A stretch of 64,000 bases of DNA, taken from contig JAQFVV010000001.1 of assembly GCA_028023455.1 (NCBI GenBank), forward strand, positions 11,842,001 through 11,906,000, written 5' to 3'. The notes under the pieces are model-generated. The model was not told the origin of the DNA. It did no database searches and saw only the letters and a list, made by a program, of their open reading frames with translations. Position 1 is the first letter of the stretch; the number at the start of each line of letters is the position of its first letter. The position numbers were made by a program, and so were the translations under genes. Source of the stretch: Epiperipatus broadwayi (Eukaryota; Animalia; Onychophora). Below are positions 25,875 through 63,982 of the stretch, piece after piece.

Positions 25875-27608
25875 TGAAACAAGCATGCTTGTTTCACATG
25901 TGCATGTATTTTAAAAAAACTACTTTACCCTCTCACCTTAAAAAACAGGTGCACTGGTTTAAACGAAAGTTACAACAAATAAAATATAGGGGGCTGAGCT
26001 GTCTAATCAATCCGGAGATGAGTGCAAAATAGTGGAGTGGGAGTTAAGAACATTCGTTCAGTCATTCATTGTAAGAAAAGTGAATGGTGAAAAATTCAGT
26101 TTTTTTTATCAGTTATTTCACTATTTAACTAACAGCTGAGCGTTTTAACCTTAGAAGATAATATTTACAGTCACCATTAATGATGAAAAAGGAAAGAATT
26201 AGTATGGAAATCATAACAATGAAAGAATAATCCCTTGGCTTTCTCTCTTTCTCTGCACCATGAACCGCCAATCTTGCCTGTTTCAACATCATGAAAAATA
26301 CCAACACTGTTCAGCTTAAATACAATGCCCTTTTTTTGTTTTGTGTAGGCATTAACTTGCTACTTGAAGTGAAGGAAGAAATGGATAAGATAAGGTAACA
26401 ATTTCATAAATATTCGATACGTATATGTATTTATAAGAAAACAAAAAATTTTTCTTTGCAAAAGATATTAACTTAGTCAAAAGTTGACAATGTTTTTTTT
26501 TTTTTTTGCTTTCCCTTAATTGAAAACACACAAGAAATGAAAATCGTGTTATTTAATTAAAACACATGTATATTCCATTAGTTAAATGCTAATTATTTTA
26601 TAAATTATATATGTGTACTATTTAAAATACTTCTAAAAACCCTGGAATAAATAGTTAAAACATTTGCTTAGTAATATCGTACGTATATCTATTTTCAATG
26701 ATTCTATGGACTAAAATTACTAATCAATAAGTATGTGCGTATAAATTATATATGCATACTGCTTAAAATACTTCCCAAAACCCCCGGAATAAATGTTCAA
26801 GAATTTTTGCTTGGACAATCTATTGGAAATGCATCTGTAATCTTCTCATCACTTGAACTGAAAAGTGAGTTTTGCTTGGACAATCTATTGGAAATACATC
26901 TGTTATCTTCTCATCACTTGAACTGAAAAATGAGTTTTGCTTGGACAATCTATTGGAAATGCATCTGTAATCTTCTCATCACTTGAACTGAAAAGTGAGT
27001 TTTGCTTGGACAATCTATTGGAAATACATCTGTTATCTTCTCATCACTTGAACTGAAAAATGAGTTTTGCTTGGACAATCTATTGGAAATGCATCTGTAA
27101 TCTTCTCATCACTTGAACTGAAAAATGAGTCTTGCTTGGAGAATCTACTTGAAATGTATTCTTTTACTCTTCTTCTCATTATAGGAAATATATTAGAAGG
27201 ACTTACATATTAATTGTTATTAAATGAAATTGTTACTTAAAATTCATTTTGGTTCCAGTTGTTCAATTCTATTTTGTTTTTGTTGCATCACTCGTTATTC
27301 ATTGCACTGATTCACAAGAATCTCATGCCTGCCGAGCTACATCTGGCATAACTAGACCTAGGTAAGTAAGGTTGTAGTGAGATGGAACTCTAGTGGCGCC
27401 GTTTGGAAAACCAAACATATAAATATCTAGATGCTTCCGGCCTCTATGGTGCTACATCCTCTGATGAGCAGGAAATATTGTTGTGGGGGGGGGGATTAAC
27501 ATCTGCATTGGGTAATGCCAATTGATAGTTCCTTCCTGCAACATGCTCATCAGGAAATAAATACAACTGAAGTAATAAAAGGGTTGTGTGTAGGGGGGTC
27601 CGGTTACA
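25875..27608 (+). mobile_element. Solo LTR (1734 bp), same lineage as the LTRs of the 44030-50464 element
   Basis: TGAAACAAGCATGC...GGTCCGGTTACA with ATAT on both sides. 27230-27608 aligns at roughly 80% (by eye) to the reverse complement of 44030-44420. Confidence 0.88.
26805..27150. repeat. 65-bp tandem array (5 units plus a partial) inside the solo LTR
   Basis: GCTTGGACAATC recurs at 26809, 26874, 26939, 27004, 27069 and, as a variant, 27134. Two variants alternate, giving a 130-bp higher-order period. Confidence 0.95.
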
Positions 27609-39155: not shown

Positions 39156-39908
39156 TTAAAATTGCTCTAGAAATTCTGTTTTAATTTCCTCAAATGCTTT
39201 GTCCTGTTCATTGGCCCAATTCCATTTTTCATCTTTTCTGATGAGTTTCAACAATGGTTCCATGCCATCAGAATTTTTTGTAAGTCCCAAAAATGATTGA
39301 ATTAGTTTATTTGTAGGCTTTGGAAAGTCCTCTATGGCACTTATATTATTGGGATAAGGTCTCATCCCACTGCTATCAATGATATGTCCTAAGAAAGTCA
39401 CTCCACTACTCATTAGGGTTCTTTTCTTAAAATTGACTTTGATCCCTTTATCATAGCATTCTTTAAAGAATTTTTCCAAATATTGAAAGTGTTCTTTAAC
39501 AGTAGATGAGGCAGTTATGACATCATCCACATAAATAGTGGTCATTTTCTTGATCTCAGGAGAGTTTGATCCAGTCTTTTGATTAGACCAATGCCACTAT
39601 TTATCAATTCGAACAGCATTCAATTAAACTGATATGGAATGCCTCATCCTGGAAAATGGTATATTGGTGATCCTCTGTATAGAGTTATATCTGCCAATAG
39701 CTGGAGTTAAGTTGAAAGTAGAGAATACTTTCTTCCCAAATCTCATAAACAGTTTGTAGATGGGCATTGGTATATTCCTGTCAGGAATGGTAATTTTGTT
39801 TAGTTGCCTAACATCTAGACAAAATCTGATTGACCCCTCTTTTTTCACTGTCACTACAGGATTGCTGTATGGTGAAGAGCATTTGGAAATAATCACCCAC
39901 TCGAGCAT
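39156..39908 (-). pseudogene. Frameshifted reverse-transcriptase fragments of the 36111-43821 gypsy element
   Basis: ORFs 39624-39908 and 39156-39545 carry RT motifs (NPVVTVKK..RFCLD; IYVDDV; VTFLGHII; IQSFLGL). Confidence 0.9.
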
Positions 39909-40164
39909 CTTATTGATTTGCTTGGTTATTTCCTCACAATATTGGTATGGTATGACTTGGATTTAAATGGCTGGTCATCAAATAATTTATGTATTCTTGA
40001 AATCCTTCTATTACTCCTGGCACTTCGGAAAATATTCTGATGTATTTATCAAGGATGATGGATCTTAACTTGCTCTTATCATCACCCTCAATCCAACTGG
40101 AGTTGGTGTTCTTTGCTTGTACGAGTGCCTTGGAAATTTGGTTCTATGTAGTCAATTTTAGGTA

Positions 40165-40525
40165 GATCATATCTCAGCATCATATCTAAGACCTCATCAC
40201 TTACCCTTAGTACTTTAAGGAAATCAACTAGACAATTGTTCATGTGTAGGAAGTCTGCCCTGAATATGGCTTCATGAATGAAGCCATTTAAGGAATACGT
40301 TATATTGTTGGGTAACTTTTGCCTCGGAAATTTGATGCTAAGCAGTCAATTTTAAGGACATATCTCGGCATCATTTCTAAGACCTCATCACTTACCCTTA
40401 GTACTTTATTAAGGAAATCAATTAGACAGTTGTTCATGTGTAGGAAATCTACCCTGAGCATGGCTTCATGAATAAGGCCATTTAAGGAATACATTATAAT
40501 ATTGTTTGGCTAACTTTTACCTCTA
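40165..40525. repeat. ~190-bp tandem duplication in the protease region
   Basis: CATATCTC.GCATCAT.TCTAAGACCTCATCACTTACCCTTAGTACTTT...CTTTT.CCTC occurs twice in tandem. Confidence 0.8.
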
Positions 40526-43500: not shown

Positions 43501-44515
43501 AAAATATATATATATAAACAATTGTTTCTTTTCTTGCATATGAAGTCTGTCGCTAGCATGTTATTTATATCATGCTATATTCCCATTGTTTAAGTGTTTT
43601 AATTTCTAAGTCTCATTTATAATGTTTGTTACTGTCTTATATTAAATTGAGGAACTTGGTCAATTATAGTCAATAGAAAAAAAGACACTGTCATAATCTA
43701 CTTATAATTGTTATAATTGGTTTTTACATAAGGAGTATTAATAGATTAGTTATACTTTTAATTAAGTATGTTTTGTTTCAGACCCTCTTTGTTTTTAATA
43801 GATCAGGACGTTACTCTTACAATATATATTAAAATAAGGCTTTACTGTATTAGAAAATAGTTTTAAATCAATCCAGAAATTTATTTCTGTTATGGTAAAG
43901 TTAAAAATATTATAATTTCTGACTTAATAAGTGACTAATAATCATTTATAAATTTTGAATATAGGTTATTACATGATTGTTTTGAAAAATATAACTTATC
44001 ATGTAAATTTGTACAATATATATATATATTGTAACCGGACCCCCATACAACCCTTTTATTACAACAGTTGTAACAATTTTCTGATGAGCATGCTGCAGGA
44101 AGGAACTATCAATTGGCATTCCCCAATGCAGATGTTAACGCCCCCTACAACAATATTTCCTGCTCATCAGAGGATGTAGTACCATAAAGACTGGAAGCAT
44201 CTAAACATTTCTATGTTTGGTTTTCCAAACAGCGCCATTAGAGTTCCGTCTCACTACAACCTGACTTGCCTAGGTCTAGTTATGCCAGACGTAGCTCAGA
44301 CGGCATGAGATTCTCATGAACAAGTGCTATAATTGATGAGTGATGCAATAAAACAAAACAGAATTGGACAACTGGATAATTAAATTTAGTTTTTAGTAAC
44401 AATAATTTTATTAAATGACAATTAAATTGCAAGTTCTAACGAAGTTCATTTTTATCCACATGATAACTCATTTTCATTTCACTTATGAAAGAGTTAGAAG
44501 CAGTTCCTTTTTTTA

Positions 44516-45011
44516 TCAATAGTTCATTTACAAATTCATTTATGAGAAGTTTGGAAACAGTCTAATTCAACAATAGTTCATTTTTGAATTCCTTTATGAG
44601 AAGAAGCTTGGAAATATTCTAATTCAACAATAGTTCATTTTGAATTCATTTATGAGAAGAAGCTTGGAAACATTCTAATTCAACAATAGTTCATTTTGAA
44701 TTCATTTATGAGAAGAAGCTTAGAAGCATTCTAATTCAACAATAGTTCATTTTTGAATTCCTTTATGAGAAGAAGCTTGGAAATATTCTAATTCAACAAT
44801 AGTTCATTTTGAATTCATTTATGAGAAGAAGCTTAGAAGCATTCTAATTCAACAATAGTTCATTTTTGAATTCCTTTATGAGAAGAAGCTTGGAAATATT
44901 CTAATTCAACAATAGTTCATTTTGAATTCATTTATGAGAAGAAGCTTGGAAACATTCTAATTCAACAATAGTTCATTTTGAATTCATTTATGAGAAGAAG
45001 CTTAGAAGCAG
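44516..45011. repeat. 56/57-bp tandem array (9 units) in the 3' LTR
   Basis: Unit AATAGTTCATTTTTGAATTCCTTTATGAGAAGAAGCTTGGAAATATTCTAATTCAAC with recurring variants. Confidence 0.95.
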
Positions 45012-45273
45012 TCAAGCATTTATGATTTATACAGCATTTCATTATTTTGTGAATTATTACTGATTGGTAGACATTTAAACTCAGCAATTCTTGGTTTGTG
45101 GAGCATTTATCATTTGGTAATTGAAGCATTTATAATTTAGTCAAATATAAAGGTATATTCATACACATAAACTCTGTTACATTACCCAGATAGAAGTAAT
45201 ATGCAATTGAAGCATTTCTAATCCATATAGTAAATACGTTCAAATATTTTTATAAATAAATTTGCGTATAGCT

Positions 45274-45615
45274 ATTTCATAACTTCACTTTATAACGTAT
45301 GATAAACATGTTCTAATATTTTATAAAACAAATTCTATGTAATTATTTCATAACTTCACTTTATAACATATGATAAAGATGTTCTAATATTTTATAAAAC
45401 AAATTCTATGTAATTATTTCATAACTTCACTTTATAACATATGATAAAGATGTCTTAATATTTTATAAAACAAAATTTATGCAACTGTTTCATAACTTCA
45501 CTTTATAACATATGATAAAGATGTTTAAATATTTTTATAAAAATAATTTTTATGTAGATATTTCATAATGTCAATTTATAATTTGTGATAAAGATGTTTA
45601 AATATTTTTATAATA
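45274..45615. repeat. 71-bp tandem array (~5 units) in the 3' LTR; counterpart at ~49599-49940
   Basis: TTTCATAAC-type unit starts at 45274, 45345, 45416, 45487 and ~45560. Confidence 0.9.
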
Positions 45616-46730
45616 TAATTACCTTCCAGTTTTGCAGTCTAGTTTACTCAAAAAGAGGGCGGGTTATTTCATCTATTTAGCATTATCTTGGGAAAGTCAT
45701 GGCACAGCATGGAGAGAGTGAAGCCGCTAATTTACCCCATTATCATTATAATTCCTCTAGCAAAGCTTTCTTTTTCCATTTTCACGTTTTGTTAAAGCTA
45801 TATTTTAATGTGTCAAAAGAATTAAGTAATATACTTTTTTTTTAAAAACATTTAATATGTTCTGCCTCTCTGTGTAAGACAAGAGAAAAAAAAGTTCTTT
45901 TCTTCCGACGACGTGCCTAATTTGCCTACCAACTCATTTTCTAAATGGGGGAGGAAGGATCTTTTGAAAATATACACATCATTTCAGTGTTAGAAGTTAT
46001 AGATCAAACTTTTTTCAAATTTTTCTAAAAAAAAAATATCAGATACTTTTTCATACATTCGCTGTTTTTTAAGATGTGAGGGAAAAATAGTTTTTTTTAA
46101 AATATGTATCCATGTGAAACAAGCATGCTTGTTTCATTACTCCCCACCAAATTTTGGGATGAAATCACCTAGAAGTACGATTTCATTCCATATATACTAT
46201 ACACATCATCTCTCATTATTGCTTCTCTCTGGTTTTCGATGTGCTGATGAAATGGGTAATATGAGCCAGAGAAGTGAATACATGAACTGTAGCCTCCAAT
46301 GCCAGGATAAGTAGATGGCTAAGCACAAACTACCAGTACACACTGCCCCATGATGTCACGAGAAAATATCTCATTTTTAAGCACTACCTCTCTTGTACCT
46401 AGAAGCATCATCCAACCAAGAGTAGGAGCCAGAGAAAAAAAACAATTTGGCACTCAGCCAACCCTGCTCAGCTTCTGTGAGTCTTAGGGGCTATCATTTG
46501 GTCTATTCATGAGACCAAGGCCTATACATGAGACCTATATATACACACTGCTGGACTACTCTTGGAGCACAACATCCAGGTCTGGATAGTGCCGAGCATA
46601 TACTTTGGAGCATCATAACACAATGCATCCAAGCAGCTCCGCTCAATCATCCACCACCCCAACATGAAAAACACAAGTTCATGCATCACTACATCACACT
46701 CACAAACTTTTTCCATCAGCTATCTCTATT

Positions 46731-47204
46731 TTATTCTGAATTATAACTGCAACCTGGTTTGGGAGACTGAGGATCATGATCAGTTCTCCTATAGTCCTCT
46801 TTTGTATTATGAGGTGACATACTTCTGGATTGTCTTTTTGTTGAAAATTTATCATGTTTAACATTACTGTGGTGTCTTGCTTCTTCACTTCTGTATTTTC
46901 TTTGGAGATCCTTGTTACTGTTTGATCTTCTAATTATACGCGTCCAATATGGACCATGAACACCATCTGTGGATTTTCTCCTGTTCCTCTTCCATGGTGG
47001 TACTTCATTTTTACATAAAAGTTTCTTTTTAAATGGTTCTTCTGCCATAGTAATTATTTTTTTGGTATTTGTAAAGGTTTCTTGTTGCTTAATTTTTTTC
47101 ACACTGATAAATCCCGAGTTTTCAGATTCCTTTTTGGTGTCTTTTCCTGCGTAAGCAACTATATTTTTAATAACTGTCTTTATATATATTTTTTTTGTAC
47201 TCAA
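46731..47204 (-). CDS. Basic, low-complexity ORF overlapping the gag-like ORF in the +1 frame; possibly its frameshifted C-terminus
   Basis: 157-aa ORF overlaps ORF 47167-48174 by 38 nt across an A8 run. No recognisable domain. Confidence 0.4.
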   Translation of the reverse strand: MSTKKIYIKTVIKNIVAYAGKDTKKESENSGFISVKKIKQQETFTNTKKIITMAEEPFKKKLLCKNEVPPWKRNRRKSTDGVHGPYWTRIIRRSNSNKDLQRKYRSEEARHHSNVKHDKFSTKRQSRSMSPHNTKEDYRRTDHDPQSPKPGCSYNSE

Positions 47205-48174
47205 TTTTTGATTTGAGTTTATTAAGCTTTTGTTTATAATTTTTATATGTTACTATTTCATAGCATATATCAGACAATTTTTCTGAAACATTTTCTTCTA
47301 TATTGGACAGTTCCTTAGTTATATGAGAATTAAGTTTTTGACTATGTTCATTTTCATGTTTTTCATCTTCTTGAAGATCAGAAGATTTTAATTTTGCTTT
47401 ATTAGATTTATTTTCATCCATTTGAAACTCTTTTGCTGTGTTTGATATTTCAGTCTCAGCTTCTGTATATACTGCTTCTTTCTTTTCAATTTTAGAGGTA
47501 TATTCCACAATCAGAAGTTTTCCTGAAGGTAGACTGACAATTTCAAGATCACCCTTTGTAATTTCAATTTCTTCCTTTTTAACAATCTCAAATTTTGCTT
47601 CATCAGTACTAGGATATTCAATTTGTGATTCCTTTAAAATATCTTTGGTTGGAAATTCCAAAGTTTCCTCCTCATCCAATTTTTTAGACTGAATTATTTC
47701 CTTTATCAACTGGTTGAACTTTTCATTCTGATTTTCCACTGCTTCCATAATTTGTTTTTCTATTCTTTGGTTTACTTCTATTGCTTGCTTGTTATCTTCT
47801 TCTCTCTGTTTGATATCTTCTTCTCTTTGTTTATCTCTTTTTTGGTTATCTTCTTCTCTTTGTTTATCTCTTTTTTGGTTATCTTCTTCTCTTTGTTTGT
47901 CTCTTTTTTGGTTATCTTCTTCTCTTTGTTTATCTCTTTTTTGGTTATCTTCTTCTCTTTGTTTGTCTCTTTTTTGGTTATCTTCTTCTCTTTGTTTGTC
48001 TCTTTTCTTTTGGTCTGCTTTTATAATTTCCAATAACTGGACTAATGTAGACGTCTCCCCTGTTTTCTCTGATTCCTCGTCTGCTTTAGCTTCTTGTTTA
48101 TCTTCTTTCTCAGGAGGATCATCTATGCTTTCTGTATTCATCATTTTTTTTGTTTTTGATCTGGTTTTCATCAA
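47167..48174 (-). CDS. Gag-like N-terminal, highly charged protein (335 aa) with six 11-aa repeats (QKRDKQREEDN)
   Basis: Intact ORF in the gag position, downstream of the PBS units. Starts MMKTRSKTKK, resembling the MxTRS starts common in gypsy Gag. 33-bp DNA repeat. No capsid or zinc-knuckle motif seen. Confidence 0.6.
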   Translation of the reverse strand: MMKTRSKTKKMMNTESIDDPPEKEDKQEAKADEESEKTGETSTLVQLLEIIKADQKKRDKQREEDNQKRDKQREEDNQKRDKQREEDNQKRDKQREEDNQKRDKQREEDNQKRDKQREEDIKQREEDNKQAIEVNQRIEKQIMEAVENQNEKFNQLIKEIIQSKKLDEEETLEFPTKDILKESQIEYPSTDEAKFEIVKKEEIEITKGDLEIVSLPSGKLLIVEYTSKIEKKEAVYTEAETEISNTAKEFQMDENKSNKAKLKSSDLQEDEKHENEHSQKLNSHITKELSNIEENVSEKLSDICYEIVTYKNYKQKLNKLKSKIEYKKNIYKDSY

Positions 48175-48399
48175 TATTTTATTCTAGTTTAGTGGTATTT
48201 TTTTTATTTCAACTTTAATAAGCTTCTCTCTCCATCCACACCATGATTTTACTCCATCTTCTTTAAAATGCCTGTTTTATTCTCTATGCCATTCATTTTT
48301 GTGTTTTTCTTTTAAACTTTTATTTTTCCACCCTTCCTGAACAAATCACATCACTGCATCATATGCACTGTTCATATCACAGAATCGTGATCTGCTTAT

Positions 48400-48648
48400 G
48401 CCTATGAGTAGGCTAGCTAGATCGGACCTCACAGTAGGGTGGCAAATTAACCGGCCTATGCCAGATAAGGCCTCACAGTAAGGCGCCAAATGTAACCGGA
48501 GCCTATAGGTAGGTTAGCCAGGTAAAGCCTCATAGTTGGATGACAATGTAATAGGTGCCTATGGTTAGGCTAGCTGGATAAAGCCTCACAGTTGGACACC
48601 AAATGTAACTGGCCTATGAGTAGGCTAGCCAGATAAGGCCTCACAGTG
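48400..48648 (-). repeat. Tandem array of ~56-bp units, each LTR terminus + tRNA-Lys(CTT)-like PBS + hairpin
   Basis: Plus-strand units start with GCCTAT at ~48400, 48454, 48501, 48557 and 48612. The minus strand reads e.g. TCCGGTTACA-TT-TGGCGCCTTACTGTGAGG and CCAGTTACA-TT-TGGTGTCCAACTGTGAGG. Confidence 0.85.
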
Positions 48649-48839
48649 CTATAACTGATGAGTGATGCAATAAAACAAAACAGAATTGGACAACTGGATA
48701 ATTAAATTTAGTTTTTAGTAACAATAATTTTATTAAATGACAATTAAATTGCAAGTTCTAACGAAGTTCATTTTTATCCACATGATAACTCATTTTCATT
48801 TCACTTATGAAAGAGTTAGAAGCAGTTCCTTTTTTTATC

Positions 48840-49337
48840 AATAGTTCATTTACAAATTCATTTATGAGAAGAAGTTTGGAAACAGTCTAATTCAACAATA
48901 GTTCATTTTTGAATTCCTTTATGAGAAGAAGCTTGGAAACATTCTAATTCAACAATAGTTCATTTTTGAATTCCTTTATGAGAAGAAGCTTGGAAATATT
49001 CTAATTCAACAATAGTTCATTTTGAATTCATTTATGAGAAGAAGCTTGGAAACATTCTAATTCAACAATAGTTCATTTTGAATTCATTTATGAGAAGAAG
49101 CTTGGAAACATTCTAATTCAACAATAGTTCATTTTTGAATTCATTTATGAGAAGAAGCTTGGAAACATTCTAATTCAACAATAGTTCATTTTTGAATTCC
49201 TTTATGAGAAGAAGCTTGGAAATATTCTAATTCAACAATAGTTCATTTTGAATTCATTTATGAGAAGAAGCTTGGAAACATTCTAATTCAACAATAGTTC
49301 ATTTTGAATTCATTTATGAGAAGAACCTTAGAAGCAG
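48840..49337. repeat. 56/57-bp tandem array (9 units) in the 5' LTR
   Basis: AATAGTTC at 48840, 48897, 48954, 49011, 49067, 49123, 49180, 49237 and 49293. Confidence 0.95.
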
Positions 49338-50478
49338 TCAAGCATTTATGATTTATACAGCATTTCATTATTTTATGAATTATTACTGATTGGTAGACAT
49401 TTAAACTCAGCAATTCTTGGTTTGTGGAGCATTTATCATTTGGTAATTGAAGCATTTATAATTTAGTCAAATATAAAGGTATATTCATACACATAAACTC
49501 TGTTACATTACCCAGATAGAAGTAATATGCAATTGAAGCATTTCTAATCCATATAGTAAATACGTTCAAATATTTTTATAAATAAATTTGCGTATAGCTA
49601 TTTCATAACTTCACTTTATAATGTATGATAAACATGTTCTAATATTTTATAAAACAAATTCTATGTAATTATTTCATAACTTCACTTTATAACGTATGAT
49701 AAAGATGTTCTAATATTTTATAAAACAAATTCTATGTAATTATTTCATAACTTCACTTTATAACATATGATAAAGATGTCTTAATATTTTATAAAACAAA
49801 ATTTGTGCAACCGTTTCATAACTTCACTTTATAACATATGATAAAAATGTTTAAATATTTTTATAAAAATAATTTTTATGTAGATATTTCATAATGTCAA
49901 TTTATAATTTGTGATAAAGATGTTTAAATATTTTTATAATATAATTACCTTCCAGTTTTGCAGTCTAGTTTACTCAAAAAGAGGGCGGGTTATTTCATCT
50001 ATTTAGCATTATCTTGGGAAAGTCATGGCACAGCATGGAGAGAGTGAAGCCGCTAATTTACCCCATTATCATTATAATTCCTCTAGCAAAGCTTTCTTTT
50101 TCCATTTTCACGTTTTGTTAAAGCTATATTTTAATGTGTCAAAAGAATTAAGTAATACACTTTTTTTTTAAAAACATTTAATATGTTCTGCCTCTCTGTG
50201 TAAGACAAGAGAAAAAAAAGTTCTTTTCTTCCGACGACATGCCTAATTTGCCTACCAACTCATTTTCTAAATGGGGGAGGAAGGATCTTTTGAAAATATA
50301 CACATCATTTCAGTGTTAGAAATTATAGATCAAACTTTTTTCAAATTTTTCTAAAAAAAAAATATCAGATAGACTTTTTCATACGTTCGCTGTTTTTTAA
50401 GATGTGAGGGAAAAATAGTTTTTTTTAAAATATGTATCCATGTGAAACAATCATGCTTGTTTCAATATATATATATAT

Positions 50479-53074
50479 AGTAACAGTCAGAAACGTGTGA
50501 TTCATTAACATAGTGCAGAATTCGACCACCACACAGAATGGCATCACCATCTAGGTAGCGAAGCCACCCGTAGTACTAAGTTCGAACGTAGTTTATCGGT
50601 TCCACAATACAATCTACGAGACAATGCATCTGATGCGACTGTACATATTTCTTTAGGCACGGTGGTCAGGGATATGCAAGAGATTCATGATTTTATTTTC
50701 AAGTTAGCCAATAATAACAGCAATATTAAATATTTATATTTTACAGAATCGAGGAAATATTACATGGAATGGGTATCGGATAAATAAAGATGTAACAGCA
50801 GATGTATAGTTTGAAATTATTTATTTAAAACATTTTAATAATAAATCATTTACTAATAATATTTGGTAATATTTAAAATTTAGTAACGGGATTTTCCAAT
50901 ACTGTTAGACATCAAAGAAATACATTTATTTATATAGCTGATGTAATCCAGCTACCTAAAATTCTCGAGCAAGTATTTCTAAGGCATGCCTTTAGGGATT
51001 TATATTTTTGCAATACAAGAGTCTAAAGTAAGATTTATAATAGTAGTGGCGGACATATATTTATTTAATTAAAGATATTTACTAATAACTAGGGGCAAAC
51101 ATTTATTTGAAAGTGAGTTATGTCACTAATGCAGGGACGGAGTTATATATTGAATAATAGAGATAATAAAAGAAACACATGGTATATCTAGAAAGGCGAT
51201 AGGAAGTGGCAGATATATTGAAACTGCAAAGCTGTGAATGAGTTTAGAACAACGGGCTGGCATTTGCCGTAGACCCAAAGAGGTAAGGTGTCATATAAGC
51301 ATAACCAGGGGCAAGTGGTTTGTGCCACGATTGCTTCCAGGTTGCATGACGGTCATCAAATCCTATGGGACATTCATTTGTCAGAAACACATGGTATATC
51401 TAGAAAGGCGATAGGAAGTGGCAGATATATTGAAACTGCAAAGCTGTGAATGAGTTTAGAACAACGGGCTGGCATTTTCCATAGACCCAAAGAGGTAAGG
51501 TGTCATATAAGCATAACCAGGGGCAAGTGGTTTGTGCCACGATTGCTTCCAGGTTGCATGACGGTCATCAAATCCTATGGGACATTCATTTGTCAGCTTG
51601 TGTAGGACGACTGGGGTTAATTTCAACCCTATAGAATCCGGAATATTCAAGCCTTGGAATGGGTCATCATGTTTCTAAAACATAACACATGTATAATGTA
51701 TAGATGATTCTGTTAAGATTTAAATATATTTTATAACTCGGTCTACATTATCAACATTTAATGAAGAACGTTTGCGACTCTCAAAGAAATGCAATTTTAT
51801 GGAATTATTAATTAAAATTTAATAAAATATAAAAACAATAGGTAAACTGGGTATTATAGCCAATATGTCAGCCATTTGCTAAGCAGTAGACCCCTGCATT
51901 ACAATAAATAATGCATTGAATGTGTGTCGATTTATATGAAAATATTAAATAATTTATGGAGGTAAATATTAATGAAGATTTGACACGCATCCACTGTTTC
52001 AAGCAATCATAGATTTATACTTAGAAAATTATGAGCATGCAACAATTATGTAATAAAATGTAGATTTTAGAAATACGTACCCAAGAAAGATAGAGTTAGG
52101 CAGGCTAGATTATTAAAGAAATTTACATATTAATTATTAAATTTATAATATTACACATGAGAATTTTACAGTTTATAAGTTATATAAAGAATGAATAAGC
52201 TATAGCGGGATATTAGTAGAGTACTCTAGAGAATTTGGATACAGGTATCTGTTTTATGAGAAGTTTTCCGATTCAGTGGTCAGTAGCAAATTGTTCATGA
52301 TTCTAGCATTAGCAGTTCTTTCCAGTATTTAGGTGGTTTAGTTATTTAAATGGCAGCAGCAGCTTTCTAATTGTTCAGGGCAGCAGATCTTTGGTTGATT
52401 TTATGGAGGGCATGGGCGTAGGTTCTCGGCAGGCAATTGACCATCTTCGGGGAAAATAGTCTTTGGTGCTTTCTACTCACACATACTGTGGCATGTAAAA
52501 CAATATATATCTTTGGAGACTCTCCTGATCGAGAGCAAAGCTAAAGTTCAACTGAAAGTTTCTAGAAAGTCTAAAATGGCCTCCTTTCTTAGCTCTTATC
52601 TTTTACATTTTTGTTATAGTTTATTTTTGGATTCCACTTAATCTGCCCTGAGGATAATCAATGCATTTTTGTTAAGTTTAATTATAGAGAAAGCTGCCTT
52701 TCTATTGTTTAGATTTACATTTTATAATTACATTTTAGGGAATTTTTCTTTTTAATTAATCTATTATCTCTCACTGACTGTTGCTTTTAAAAATTTCAAA
52801 TACAAAAGGGAACATATGATTATTTTTACTTTTAATTAAATATTACAATCTATTTCAAAATTATTACTAAATGAAATTTAAACAAAGCAATAAATAACGA
52901 ATTTTACAATTCAAAATAAATGGTTAAAATTATATATTTTTATATAACTAAAAGAAGAAATCTAAATTATATTATTTATCTTCATTTATTGCCTTAAATT
53001 TGGGTAGGATAGAGCGGTGAGTGAGAGACGATAGAAAAAAAGGTGAAACTTAAGATTCGAATCTTACTGTTTCA
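50479..53074 (-). mobile_element. Solo LTR (~2.6 kb), related to 8476-11382
   Basis: Termini AGTAACAGTCAG and CTTACTGTTTCA (imperfect inverted repeat), ATAT on both sides; shared blocks with the 8476 LTR. Confidence 0.75.
51173..51596. repeat. 212-bp direct tandem duplication within the solo LTR
   Basis: AAACACATGGTATATCTAGAAAGG...CATTTGTCAG at 51173-51384 and 51385-51596, nearly identical. Confidence 0.95.
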
Positions 53075-60638: not shown

Positions 60639-61778
60639 CTACTTACTTATTATTGATCCTTTGTTCAGCAGGTCTAAGAATATGGGCATTATAGGACCCC
60701 TGAATTCCAGACTCGTCTTCCAGAAGAAAGGCATTCTGACCATATTTGTCTTTATAGTAAAAGGTCCATCATATATCGGAAAATTTTTTTTGTATTGATG
60801 CCTTGTTGGATTGCTGACATGAGGTTTTCTGACAAAAACCCAATCACCAGTATCGAATTGGCAAGGATTCCGGTTTACACGCCTTATGCGCAATTCAGCC
60901 ATGTACTTTAATTTTATCCTAGCCTTTTCTTTGTCCCTCTCTCCATTAGGATTATCATGATCGATGGGTAATGGAGCTTTGATAAGCATAGGATAATTTT
61001 TTCTGAAATGCAGCCTAATGGGAGTAAACCCTGTGGACTCATTTAACGTCCAATTAATATAATTAACAACATTCTCAGTCTGTTTCACCCATTCTTTGTG
61101 GTTCTGGTTGACATACACCTGGAACAAATGGTTAAGCTCCCTCATAACCCGCTCACAGGGGTTAGATTGAGGGTTGCATATGGATGTTAATAAATGTTTT
61201 ATATCCTGTTGCTGGAGCCAACGCTTCCACTGGTGAGATTTAAAGGGTGTTCCATGATTTGAGAGTATACATTGAGGCTTGCCGATTCTAGGAATTTGCT
61301 GCTCTTGTAATACTTTGATAGTGCTTAAAGCATCAGCCTTTCTTAATGGATAAGCTGTCACATATTTTGAAAAGACATCATACATGACAGCTAAGAATCG
61401 GTATTGCCGATATGCTGGTAATGGACCATAAAAGTCAATAGCCAGTAACTCGTTAGGATTCTGAGCTAGAATGGGTTGCAAGACTCCCATAAAATTTTTA
61501 TTTATGGGTTTCATTCGTGAACATGTGTGGCAACTTCTGAGAACTGATAAAATATTTGAATACATCCCTGGCCAATAAAATAATTCTCGGAGCACATACT
61601 CAACCTTATGTGGTCCAAAATGTCTATACAGACAATGCACATATTCAATTAAACAATTCCTAATCTTTTTAGGTATGAGGGTTCTCCAGGAACCTTCTTT
61701 TGCAGTAACCTTGTATTGAAGGACACCATCCTCAATACGATAAGCTCCTTCTTGTTGTTCTAACTTGGATAGGTCCAT
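60639..61778 (-). pseudogene. Gypsy integrase (HHCC zinc finger, DDE core, GPF motif)
   Basis: HCLYRHFG..CHTC; LAIDFYGP; ILSNHGTPF (second D altered to N); PQSNPCERVMREL; YDGPFTI. Confidence 0.9.
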
Positions 61779-62658
61779 TTAGTGAGGGATTCAGGGCTCC
61801 TTTCTTGTAGGCTACCATTGGAGCATAATCCAGATTGCTTGCCTGTATTTCTGGTAGTTTCTGTAAATCCTGTTCCATGGAATCATCGATAACCGATGTA
61901 ATCGCAGCGATACTTAAGTTATCCAAGTGTAGGTGATGCTGTGAAAGATCTACAGGGTGCTGACTTAAGACATCTGCCACAATGTTATCCTTGCCAGGGC
62001 AATAGACCACTCTATATTGAAATTTCTGCAAGATCAAGCTCCACTGAGTGAGCTGATCATTTGTCAGGTAACTATTATTCAGAAATTCTAAACATTTATG
62101 GTCAGTAATAACAATGATGTTTGAGCCCAGCAAGAATTGTTTGAACTTTCTGAAGGCCCATACAATGGCCAGAGCCTCCTTTTCAGTAGTTGCATAATTA
62201 TTTTCAGCCCCTTTTAGGGTACGGCTACAAAAATATAATACCTTGTGATGTTTCTGCTCATCAATTTGGAATAAGACTACTCCCAATTCATGTCGGCTAC
62301 TATCAGTTTGAATATAAAATGTTTGGGGAAAATCAGGGTAAGCCAGAACTACTTGTTTCAGAAAATTCTTCTTCATGAGCCGAAACTCCTGCTCCTGTTG
62401 TGAACCCCAAAACCACTTTTGGTCCTTTCTTAATAACTGGACTAAGGATGATGATTCTACAGCAAAATTTTCATAAAACTGGTGGTAAAAGTTGCAGAGA
62501 CCTAAAAATGACCTCTCCTGGTGTCTGTTAGCAGGTATAGGGAAATGCTCAATTGCAGCTAATTTATCTGGACAGGGTTTAATACCATCCTTCCCAATTA
62601 CAAAGCCCAAAAATGCCACTTCATCCATGGCTAAATAACTTTTCTGCAAGTTGATCAT
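61732..62658 (-). pseudogene. Gypsy RT C-terminus and RNase H
   Basis: VAFLGFVI; RSFLGLCNFY; FYIQTDSS; NYATTEKEALAIVWA; VITDHKCL; DNIVADVLS. Confidence 0.92.
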
Positions 62659-63127
62659 GATATTTTTTTTGACTGCATTCGGTCAAAAATATCTCCACAT
62701 GTTCCAAGTGCTCTTCAATATTTCTGGATGCAATAACCACATCATCCATGTACATTACTATAATATTTTTAACCTTCTCTGACAATATCTGATCCAAACA
62801 CCTTAACAACCCGGATCCACTGTTGATCAACCCGAACGGCATCCGTTTAAAGACATACGTATACCCTTCATACCGAAACCCCGTATATTGGCAATCGGAT
62901 GGATGAAGAGGTATCTGCCAATAACTCGAAGTCAAGTCAAATATACTAAAGACAGTTTTCCCTTGAAATCTAGCCAGAATTTCAGTTATTGTAGGAGAAA
63001 TGTCTCTTTCAGGAATAGTGATAGCATTTAACCGGCGAGCATCCAAACATATTCTAGCTGCCCCATCTTTCTTCTTTACTACCACCAAAGGGTTAATATT
63101 AAGATGATGCTTGTTTACCAATAACAC
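62621..63127 (-). pseudogene. Gypsy reverse transcriptase core
   Basis: NPLVVVKKKDGAARICLDARRLN; FDLTSSYWQI; RMPFGLINS; YMDD. Confidence 0.95.
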
Positions 63128-63460
63128 CCCATTTGATCATTTTTTGTATTTGACTATCCATCTTAGCTTTATATTGAAATGAAATGGGGTAAGATCGACT
63201 TTGAAAATGGTTTTCTTCTTTTACTTTGATCCGATGAACATACCATACCCTTCAATAGCCCGAGGTCTATTAGAAAAAAACGTATGGTACTGCGTCAACA
63301 CCTGTGTTAAAAGATGTTGCTCTGTCCCCTTTAGTATGGACTGTTTCACCTTATTCTTTACTTCAGTGGTGTCTAAGACTGACTGCATACAGTGTATTTG
63401 TAAGGACTGATACTTTTTTAATCCCTCCAGGGGCATTATGCTTTCTCTACCTTGAAATAC

Positions 63461-63982
63461 TCATTGACCATAATCAAGCACACATTTATGCTGATGAAGA
63501 AAATCTGTTTCCACTATGACATCTTGTATCAACCCGGGCATTATCAAAAAGAGTTGATCCACTTCCATGTTTCCCAGATGAAGCTGGGTCCAAACCTGCT
63601 TTGTCTCTACATTTGCCTTTTTACCATTAGCCAATGTAACTTGCAGTCTCTTTAGAGGCAATGTATACAGGCGAGTTTGTTGTTTTAACTGTGAATAAAA
63701 ATGACTGGAAATCAGGGACATCTGACTCCCAGAATCAATTAAACCCTGTGCTGTGATGGATCCAATTTTTATAGTTATGATGGGACAAGTCTGGTTGGCT
63801 CCAACTAACGTCGGTTCATCTTTATCAACCACCACATTGGATACTGTTCCCCCATCTCCGTTGAGTATGTTTTCCTTCTCTATTCTATCCCTACTATAAT
63901 CAATCTCTGTCAATAATGTTATTATTTCTTCTATACACATTTTATAATTAATCAACATGGCTTGTTGTATCACCACTGGCAT
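63461..63982 (-). pseudogene. Gypsy aspartic protease region
   Basis: CPIITIKIG..GLIDSGSQMSLIS (DSG active site)..VIVETDFL. Confidence 0.88.

What the first reader, a model, noticed from the sequence alone, without database searches (positions are those of the whole stretch)
48400..48648. Tandem array of LTR-terminus + tRNA-Lys PBS + hairpin units in an LTR element leader
Seen: on the element strand the leader has four complete and one partial ~56-bp units. Each complete unit starts with a copy of the LTR end, and one has the exact last 10 nt TCCGGTTACA found at 44030 and 27608. A PBS-like stretch follows (TGGTGTCCAACTGTGAGG, TGTCATCCAACTATGAGG, TGGCGCCTTACTGTGAGG, TGCCACCCTACTGTGAGG). Most units end in a 5-bp stem (G/A)CCTA-N4-TAGGC whose loop varies (CTCA, ACCA, CCTA, CTCA) while the stem is nearly fixed; one unit has lost it by deletion. 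Established: Lys-CTT tRNA primes at TGGCGCCCAAC(GTGGGG), LTR elements normally have one PBS, and the U5 end is copied from the priming site. The units vary around TGGCGCCCAAC, each with 2-3 changes. Inference: this may be a multi-primer leader offering alternative priming and integrase-end sites, a decoy for tRNA fragments, or a repeated packaging/dimerisation module in a pol-less element competing for trans-supplied RT. I cannot confirm novelty against the literature.
Basis: partly seen in the sequence, partly recalled or inferred. Interest (0 to 1): 0.8.

Follow-up and report, generated by a model that had tools for sequence, protein, structure and literature searches.

The report
Repeated primer-site relics in a retrotransposon leader
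A retrotransposon in this genome has tandem copies of its "LTR end + tRNA-Lys primer site + small hairpin" junction, but only the copy next to the LTR is used for priming, so the others are mostly fossils.

Summary
On the minus strand, 48400-48644 holds one partial and four complete units of about 56 bp. Each has a mimic of the last 10 nt of the LTR, a 2-nt spacer, a tRNA-Lys(CTT)-like primer-binding site (PBS) and, in most units, a 5-bp hairpin.

The array is a family feature, not a quirk of this copy. The family has at least 2,500 LTR ends in a 5.6-Gb genome, inserts at (AT)n and has no pol. Arrays run from 1 to 8 units, and 1-2 units are commonest.

The window copy is damaged: its 5' LTR has lost the last 292 bp.

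The multi-primer reading fails as a regular function:
- A tRNA-perfect PBS lies next to the true LTR end in 126 copies, three of them with tRNA read-through.
- It never follows an internal mimic (0 genome-wide, although 238 internal units keep the full mimic).
- Only 2 element ends stop at an internal mimic, against 1,778 normal ends. Both are fold-back products.
- The hairpin shows no compensatory changes, is deleted in many copies, and the leader folds no better than shuffles.

Best reading: these are relics of repeated duplication across the LTR/PBS junction. Internal units prime rarely and aberrantly, perhaps as a back-up. This is a new variant of a known kind, of moderate interest. No earlier finding on other DNA was returned.

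The parts
48400..48644 (-). Tandem array: a partial unit (48612-48644), then units A (48557-48611), B (48501-48556), C (48454-48500, hairpin 5' arm deleted) and D (48400-48453). Each unit is an LTR-end mimic + spacer + Lys-CTT-like PBS + hairpin.
48645..50464 (-). 5' LTR, truncated. It lacks the last 292 bp of the LTR. The junction AGCACT|GTGAGG runs into a unit's PBS.
44031..46136 (-). Complete 3' LTR (2,106 bp). It starts TGAAAC and ends GGTCCGGTTACA, with (AT)n flank. It is 98.35% identical to the 5' LTR over the shared part.
46137..48399 (-). Internal region of 2.26 kb with no gag or pol domain. The 335-aa K/E/D-rich ORF at 47167-48174 carries 33-bp repeats. A G-rich tract (GGTGGGGAG) lies 3 nt before the 3' LTR.
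44292..44314 (-). U5 segment resembling the complement of the 5' half of tRNA-Lys(CTT). It is the homology at which the read-through copy L075 switches from tRNA back into U5.

Best explanation
The element at 44031-50464 (minus strand) is a copy of an abundant non-autonomous LTR retrotransposon. It is primed by tRNA-Lys(CTT) and integrates at (AT)n.

Its leader carries a copy-number-variable tandem array (1-8 units in the family). The array was made by repeated duplication of the junction module: the last 10 nt of the LTR, a TT spacer, the PBS and a short hairpin.

Only the unit that abuts the real LTR end serves as the primer-binding site. Its sequence is periodically rewritten from the tRNA. 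Internal units are relics that drift: B and D have lost the TGG and/or CA essentials.

Shown:
- The array is family-wide and variable in size.
- The primer is tRNA-Lys(CTT).
- Priming imprints are exclusive to the LTR-adjacent unit.
- Ends at internal mimics are extremely rare.

Inferred:
- New units arise by template switching across the LTR/PBS junction during plus-strand synthesis. The switch would run from ...ATAGGC at the hairpin end back to ...ATGGCGG/ATGGGGG, 10 nt before the LTR end. Replication slippage or unequal exchange in a master copy would give the same result.
- Arrays then expand and contract by misalignment of the repeats.
- An internal unit with a fair PBS (type C) can occasionally prime, for example when the first PBS is destroyed.

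The window copy has additionally lost 292 bp of U5 plus part of a unit through a microhomology (ACT) deletion.
For: **Family-wide array.** The family has 2,289 first-look candidates, and the 40 scored copies are 89-100% identical to the window's array. Their unit layouts are LTR-A-B-C-D and variants of up to 8 units. Copies with 1, 2 and 3 units were read directly. I matched the coordinates by hand for 39 unselected 5' junctions. That gave 10, 13, 5, 5, 4 and 3 copies with 1 to 6 units.

**Primer identity.** A host tRNA-Lys(CTT) gene was found. L075 reads LTR end + TT + 69 nt complementary to that tRNA. Three such read-through copies of this family exist.

**Imprint.** The perfect PBS TGGCRCCCAACRTGGGGC follows the true LTR end in 126 copies, about 29 of the first 100 junctions listed. 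It follows an internal mimic 0 times, although 238 internal units keep the full mimic plus a PBS-like stretch.

**Ends.** There are 1,778 true LTR ends followed by flank. Seven hits place a type-C mimic next to non-PBS sequence, and only two of them lie in arrays. No convincing case exists for the type-B mimic.

**Hairpin.** In 154 units from 38 copies, every departure from GCCTA/TAGGC is one-sided, and 19 units lack the 5' arm. The leader folds no better than shuffles: z = -1.6 and +0.9.

**Non-autonomous.** The ORFs have no Pfam domain. For about 30 copies paired by coordinates, the 5'-junction to 3'-end spacing is mostly 4.3-5.5 kb.
Against: - The core ACTGTGAGG and the hairpin stem are the same in all four unit types, while the loop varies between subfamilies. 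That could reflect constraint on something other than priming.
- Two ends at an internal mimic, both with the family's ATATAT target, show that internal units are not fully inert.
- The duplication mechanism is inferred, not observed.
- The pattern counts need exact matches, so they undercount decayed copies.
- No RNA or cDNA data could be laid.
Confidence: 0.62

Rival explanations
1. The repeated module is a selected cis-element unrelated to priming, for example repeated nucleocapsid-binding, packaging or dimerisation sites. These would help a pol-less element compete for the proteins of an autonomous partner.
For: - The core ACTGTGAGG and the GCTAGC-containing hairpin are kept in all unit types while the loop varies.
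- The element is non-autonomous.
- Multi-unit copies have amplified.
Against: - There is no compensatory change in the stem, and 19 of 154 units lack one arm yet sit in successful copies.
- Folding is not better than shuffles.
- Copies with 1-2 units make up more than half of an unselected sample, so more units are not needed for spread.
Confidence: 0.2
2. Multi-primer leader: several units are used regularly as alternative primer-binding sites, and each carries its own integrase end.
For: - Units A and C keep TGG...and the full TCCGGTTACA-TT mimic.
- L062 and L063 end exactly at a type-C mimic, followed by the family's ATATAT target.
- In L063 the LTR-adjacent PBS is deleted.
- Engineered retroviral vectors with two PBSs initiate at both. 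I know this only from the title of Voronin and Pathak 2004, cited in PMC4227088.
Against: - There are 0 tRNA imprints at internal units against 126 at the LTR-adjacent unit.
- There are 2 internal-mimic ends against 1,778 normal ends.
- Both exceptions are fold-back rearrangements.
- Units B and D mismatch the tRNA 3' end within the first 5 nt.
Confidence: 0.08
3. Decoy for 3' tRNA fragments: the internal PBS-like sites soak up tRFs that would otherwise block the real PBS.
For: 3' tRFs are reported to repress LTR retrotransposons through PBS complementarity (PMC12853362, abstract). The units are PBS-like.
Against: - Internal units match the 18-nt tRNA end at only 13-15 positions and carry a 1-nt bulge (compared).
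- They are not kept close to the tRNA sequence, with 0 perfect copies.
- No small-RNA data could be examined.
Confidence: 0.04

Closest known systems
Non-autonomous LTR retrotransposons (LARD/TRIM-like elements)
   Same: LTR pair, TG...CA termini, tRNA PBS, no pol, and mobilisation presumably in trans.
   Different: - The LTRs are large (2.1 kb) with their own internal tandem arrays.
- The leader holds a tandem array that includes the LTR terminus and the PBS.
- No autonomous partner was identified here.
Engineered retroviral vectors with two primer-binding sites (Voronin and Pathak 2004, J Virol 78:5402, known to me only from its title as cited in PMC4227088)
   Same: More than one PBS lies in one leader. 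Priming at the downstream site predicts an LTR lengthened by the intervening sequence, as seen in L063.
   Different: - Here the array is natural and the downstream sites are degenerate.
- The genomic record shows almost exclusive use of the first site.
- Each natural unit also carries a mimic of the LTR end.
Tandem repeats in the untranslated leaders of insect gypsy-like elements (from memory, not tested)
   Same: Copy-number-variable short tandem repeats lie between the PBS and gag.
   Different: Those repeats lie downstream of the PBS and do not contain the LTR end or the PBS itself.
Retrovirus-type inheritance of the PBS from the primer tRNA, and tRNA read-through during plus-strand strong-stop synthesis (established retrovirology, from memory)
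   Same: A share of copies carries a PBS rewritten to the exact tRNA sequence, and a few carry up to 69 nt of tRNA complement.
   Different: Here it is seen as a natural genomic record in a non-autonomous element. It serves as a marker of which unit primes.

Membership tests
LTR retrotransposon | Two direct long terminal repeats with TG...CA ends | tested here: met
   LTRs at 44323-46136 and 48645-50464 are 98.35% identical. The full LTR at 44031-46136 starts TGAAAC and ends GTTACA.
LTR retrotransposon | Target-site duplication | tested here: inconclusive
   Both flanks are (AT)n, so the length of the duplication cannot be read.
LTR retrotransposon | PBS complementary to the 3' end of a host tRNA, directly after the 5' LTR | tested here: met
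   In family copies the LTR end + TT is followed by TGGCGTCCAAC... or by the exact TGGCGCCCAACGTGGGGC. The host tRNA-Lys(CTT) gene is L059. The window copy has lost this junction.
LTR retrotransposon | Polypurine tract before the 3' LTR | tested here: inconclusive
   GGTGGGGAG lies 3 nt upstream of the 3' LTR. It is short and not adjacent.
Autonomous Ty3/gypsy element | gag and pol with protease, RT, RNase H and integrase | tested here: not met
   The internal ORFs have no Pfam domain and the internal region is 2.26 kb. A candidate longer copy was non-coding. The superfamily therefore cannot be assigned.
Functional multi-PBS leader | tRNA-templated PBS imprint at internal units | tested here: not met
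   0 genome-wide, against 126 at the LTR-adjacent unit.
Functional multi-PBS leader | LTRs lengthened by whole units at their U5 end | tested here: not met
   2 cases (L062, L063), both rearranged, against 1,778 normal ends.
Structured RNA element (hairpin) | Compensatory base-pair changes or unusually stable folding | tested here: not met
   Only one-sided changes in 154 units. Fold z-scores are -1.6 and +0.9. There is no Rfam match.

The most novel reading that the evidence does not exclude
The array is a self-repair cassette. Each unit stores a spare primer site with its own ready-made LTR end. When the first PBS is lost or blocked, priming shifts to the next usable unit, and the LTR simply grows by the skipped units.

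Over evolutionary time this 'PBS jumping' lengthens U5. The last 292 bp of the present LTR begin with a relic of tRNA-Lys complement, and L075 shows such growth caught in the act.
Probability: 0.12. Interest if true: 0.7.

Novelty: new variant of a known kind. Interest (0 to 1): 0.4.

Why it matters
Textbook LTR elements have one primer-binding site. Here a natural family carries up to eight junction modules, and the genome keeps a readable record of which one primes, through the tRNA imprint, tRNA read-through and LTR ends. That record can answer a question otherwise addressed only with engineered two-PBS vectors.

The answer here is that the LTR-adjacent site wins almost always, and that priming further in gives aberrant DNA. 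The family also illustrates how reverse-transcription errors around the PBS can remodel and lengthen LTRs.

It does not reveal a new mechanism of replication.

Tried and rejected
- **Ribozyme or tRNA gene in the LTR or leader.** The CTGATGAG motifs suggested a hammerhead, but Rfam found nothing at gathering or at E<=1, and ARAGORN found no tRNA in the window.
- **Another tRNA as primer.** The 3' ends of the sampled host tRNAs (Lys-TTT, Thr, Arg, Val, Ala, Gln, Trp, Phe, Cys, Ser) do not fit. Only Lys-CTT does.
I replaced it with exhaustive pattern counts.
- **Pattern.** Its last position excluded the normal unit. I repeated it.
- **Pattern.** It was too loose (336 hits, 102 in the control) and was not used.
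- **L064 and L065.** These are chance matches to the type-C mimic with no array upstream.
- **Autonomous partner.** A copy with 8.7-kb spacing (L077) has no open frame.
- **Literature.** I found no paper on a natural tandem PBS array. One search was swamped by 'phosphate-buffered saline'.
- **Reads.** Expression, strong-stop ends and tRFs therefore remain untested.
- **Sequencing runs.** They show only that the family is in DNA runs of organism A and of a second organism B.

Full report
**What is in the window**

The region 44031-50464 is one LTR element on the minus strand.
- The two LTRs match at 98.35% over 44323-46136 and 48645-50464.
- The 3' LTR continues 292 bp further, to 44031. There it ends ...GGGGGTCCGGTTACA against an (AT)n flank.
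- The 5' LTR starts TGAAAC after (AT)n.
- The 5' LTR therefore lacks its last 292 bp. The break (AGCACT|GTGAGG) joins it to the middle of a PBS-like stretch.
- The internal 2.26 kb has only a 335-aa K/E/D-rich repeat ORF and a 157-aa ORF, neither with a Pfam domain. The copy is non-autonomous.

**The array**

Tandem Repeats Finder gives period 56, 3.4 copies and 76% matches at 48460-48647. Read on the minus strand, there is a partial unit followed by four units, which I call A, B, C and D.
- TCCGGTTACA is indeed the LTR terminus.

**The family**

The genome (5.6 Gb) holds thousands of copies. One search gave 2,289 first-look candidates, and the 40 scored are 89-100% identical. Exhaustive pattern counts gave:
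- 1,778 true LTR ends followed by non-PBS flank, almost all ATATAT...;
- 791 true LTR ends followed by a PBS-like stretch.

In ordinary copies the real LTR end + TT abuts unit A, followed by B, C and D. Variants have up to 8 units. Copies with one unit (L067, L074), two units (L068, L069, L073) and three units (L070-L072) also exist.

I matched the coordinates by hand for 39 unselected junctions. The counts were:

| Units | 1 | 2 | 3 | 4 | 5 | 6 |
|---|---|---|---|---|---|---|
| Copies | 10 | 13 | 5 | 5 | 4 | 3 |

Unit D, always the last, is the most decayed: its mimic lacks CA and its PBS begins TGCCACC.

For about 30 copies I paired 5' junctions with 3' ends by coordinates. They lie mostly 4.3-5.5 kb apart, so the family is largely pol-less.

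**Which tRNA primes**

A sample of host tRNA genes was found with Rfam RF00005 and ARAGORN. It includes tRNA-Lys(CTT), whose 3' end gives the PBS TGGCGCCCAACGTGGGGC.

Unit A (TGGCGTCCAACTGTGAGGC in most copies) pairs with that tRNA end with one G-U pair, one bulged U and one mismatch. B and D mismatch within the first five positions. C is perfect for seven.

L075 reads: LTR end, TT, then 69 nt complementary to tRNA-Lys(CTT). It then switches, at a shared GAGCTA, into the U5 segment that begins the last 292 bp of the LTR. From there it runs to a second LTR end and a TATATA flank. Three read-through copies of this family exist. The primer is therefore settled.

**Which unit primes**

Retrovirus-type replication copies the primer's 3' 18 nt into the plus strand (established retrovirology, from memory). 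Some progeny therefore carry the exact tRNA sequence at the site that was used.
- The exact PBS, allowing CpG decay, follows the true LTR end in 126 copies. That is about 29 of the first 100 junctions.
- It follows an internal mimic in no copy.
- Yet 238 internal units keep the full mimic TAGGC-TC(C/T)(G/A)G-TTACA plus a PBS-like stretch.

At the LTR-adjacent rate (126 of 791), about 38 imprints would be expected in those internal units.

**Do LTRs end at internal mimics?**

Priming at an internal unit predicts LTRs lengthened by whole units and ending at that unit's mimic.
- A type-C mimic followed by non-PBS sequence occurs 7 times.
- On reading them, two are chance matches in unrelated DNA (L064, L065), and two further hits carry the same flank as L065. 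One is a variant unit with a shortened spacer.
- Two are real: L062 and L063. Both are followed by the family's ATATAT target.

L063 is LTR + a unit A whose PBS has been deleted (only TGGGGC, the end of a tRNA-perfect PBS, remains) + B + mimic + flank. This is what priming at unit C predicts when the first PBS is dead.

Both loci are fold-back structures, with inverted copies of the array and the 5' internal region.

A type-B mimic next to flank gives three doubtful hits, none with the AT target.

Internal priming therefore happens, but at about 0.1% of fixed ends, and it gives aberrant products.

**The hairpin**

In 154 units from 38 copies the stem is GCCTA/TAGGC in 78 and ACCTA/TAGGC in 24. 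All other states are one-sided changes (mismatch or G-U), and 19 units lack the 5' arm. There is no compensatory change.

The loop differs between subfamilies while the stem is kept. However, that pattern required the stem, so it is only a hint.

The window's array folds at z = -1.6 and a single-unit leader at z = +0.9 against shuffles. Rfam finds nothing.

**How it most likely works**

Shown:
- One functional PBS lies next to the LTR and is rewritten from tRNA-Lys(CTT).
- Internal units are not used in productive cycles.

Inferred:
- A unit is born when synthesis that has crossed LTR end, PBS and hairpin switches back to a point 10 nt before the LTR end. The sequences there are similar (...CATAGGC|TCCGG against ...TATGGCGG|TCCGG).
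- L075 shows that such back-switches into U5 do occur in this family.
- Slippage or unequal exchange in a master copy would give the same result.
- The window's own U5 deletion, and the different one in L006, both end inside ACTGTGAGG of a unit. They are further rearrangements at short homologies.

**Comparison with what is known**

It works like an ordinary tRNA-primed LTR element with a repeat-bearing leader. The nearest experimental analogue is the two-PBS retroviral vector, of which I hold only the title.

I found no paper describing a natural tandem array of LTR end + PBS modules. That absence is weak evidence, because the library is partial.

The superfamily is unassigned: no pol and no partner were found.

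**Limits**
- The pattern counts need exact matches.
- I built no consensus of the element.

**Verdict**

The multi-primer interpretation is not supported as a regular function. The array is best read as relics of junction duplications, with rare and aberrant internal priming. It is a new variant of a known kind, with interest about 0.4.

Noticed in passing
G000 genome-wide; window 44020-44030 and 50465-50482: The family has a very strong target preference. Nearly all of the 1,778 LTR ends with flank are followed by ATATATAT, including the window copy, which sits in an (AT)n tract on both sides.
   Followed up: partly
L075 (G000:C2:34160840-34161245, minus strand): An LTR is lengthened by tRNA read-through. 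It reads LTR end + TT + 69 nt of tRNA-Lys(CTT) complement, then a switch at GAGCTA into U5, a second copy of the last ~270 bp of the LTR, and a TATATA flank.
   Followed up: yes
window 44292-44314 (minus strand): A U5 segment resembles the complement of the D arm and anticodon stem of tRNA-Lys(CTT). Its alignment score is 28 against a shuffle mean of 17 and a maximum of 28 in 300 shuffles. It lies just downstream (about 9 nt) of the point where the window's 5' LTR breaks off. It may be an old read-through relic or a SINE fragment.
   Followed up: partly
G000:C64:434639-434754: Two LTR ends of the family face each other 82 bp apart, with tRNA-Lys-derived sequence between them. This looks like another fold-back product. 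I did not read it.
   Followed up: no
L076 (G000:C12445:1581560-1581800): A tRNA-Lys-like sequence with CCA is joined to GT + TGTAACG..., the reverse of another family's LTR end (spacer AC). It is either a tRNA/strong-stop chimera or a read-through copy. Several families here share the end ...TTACA with a Lys-CTT PBS and spacers TT, AA, AC, AT or TC.
   Followed up: partly
L059:1501-1576: The sampled tRNA-Lys(CTT) gene ends ...GTTGGGCACCA, with CCA encoded in the genome and A where the PBS imprint implies G. It may be a retrocopy with CpG decay.
   Followed up: no
window 27198-27607 (+): A fragment is 84% identical to the last ~400 bp of the LTR and ends in the same TCCGGTTACA + ATATAT. A 65-bp tandem array lies beside it at 26740-27224.
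   Followed up: partly
window 44517-45007, 45273-45613 and the same in the 5' LTR (48839-49333, 49599-49939): The LTR itself holds two tandem arrays: 56/57 bp x 8.8 and 71 bp x 4.8.
   Followed up: no
window 47814-48006: Repeats of 33 bp x 5.8 at 98% identity lie inside the 335-aa ORF. They encode KRDKQREEDNQ repeats.
   Followed up: no
window 60639-63982 (-): An unrelated Ty3/gypsy-type pol is present, with protease, RT, RNase H and integrase domains split into four ORFs. It is cut by the window end. An RT fragment lies at 39156-39545 (-).
   Followed up: no
window 51171-51596 and 40126-40523: Two-copy tandem duplications: 212 bp at 99% and 194 bp at 85%.
   Followed up: no
I worked beside them afterwards.
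   Followed up: no
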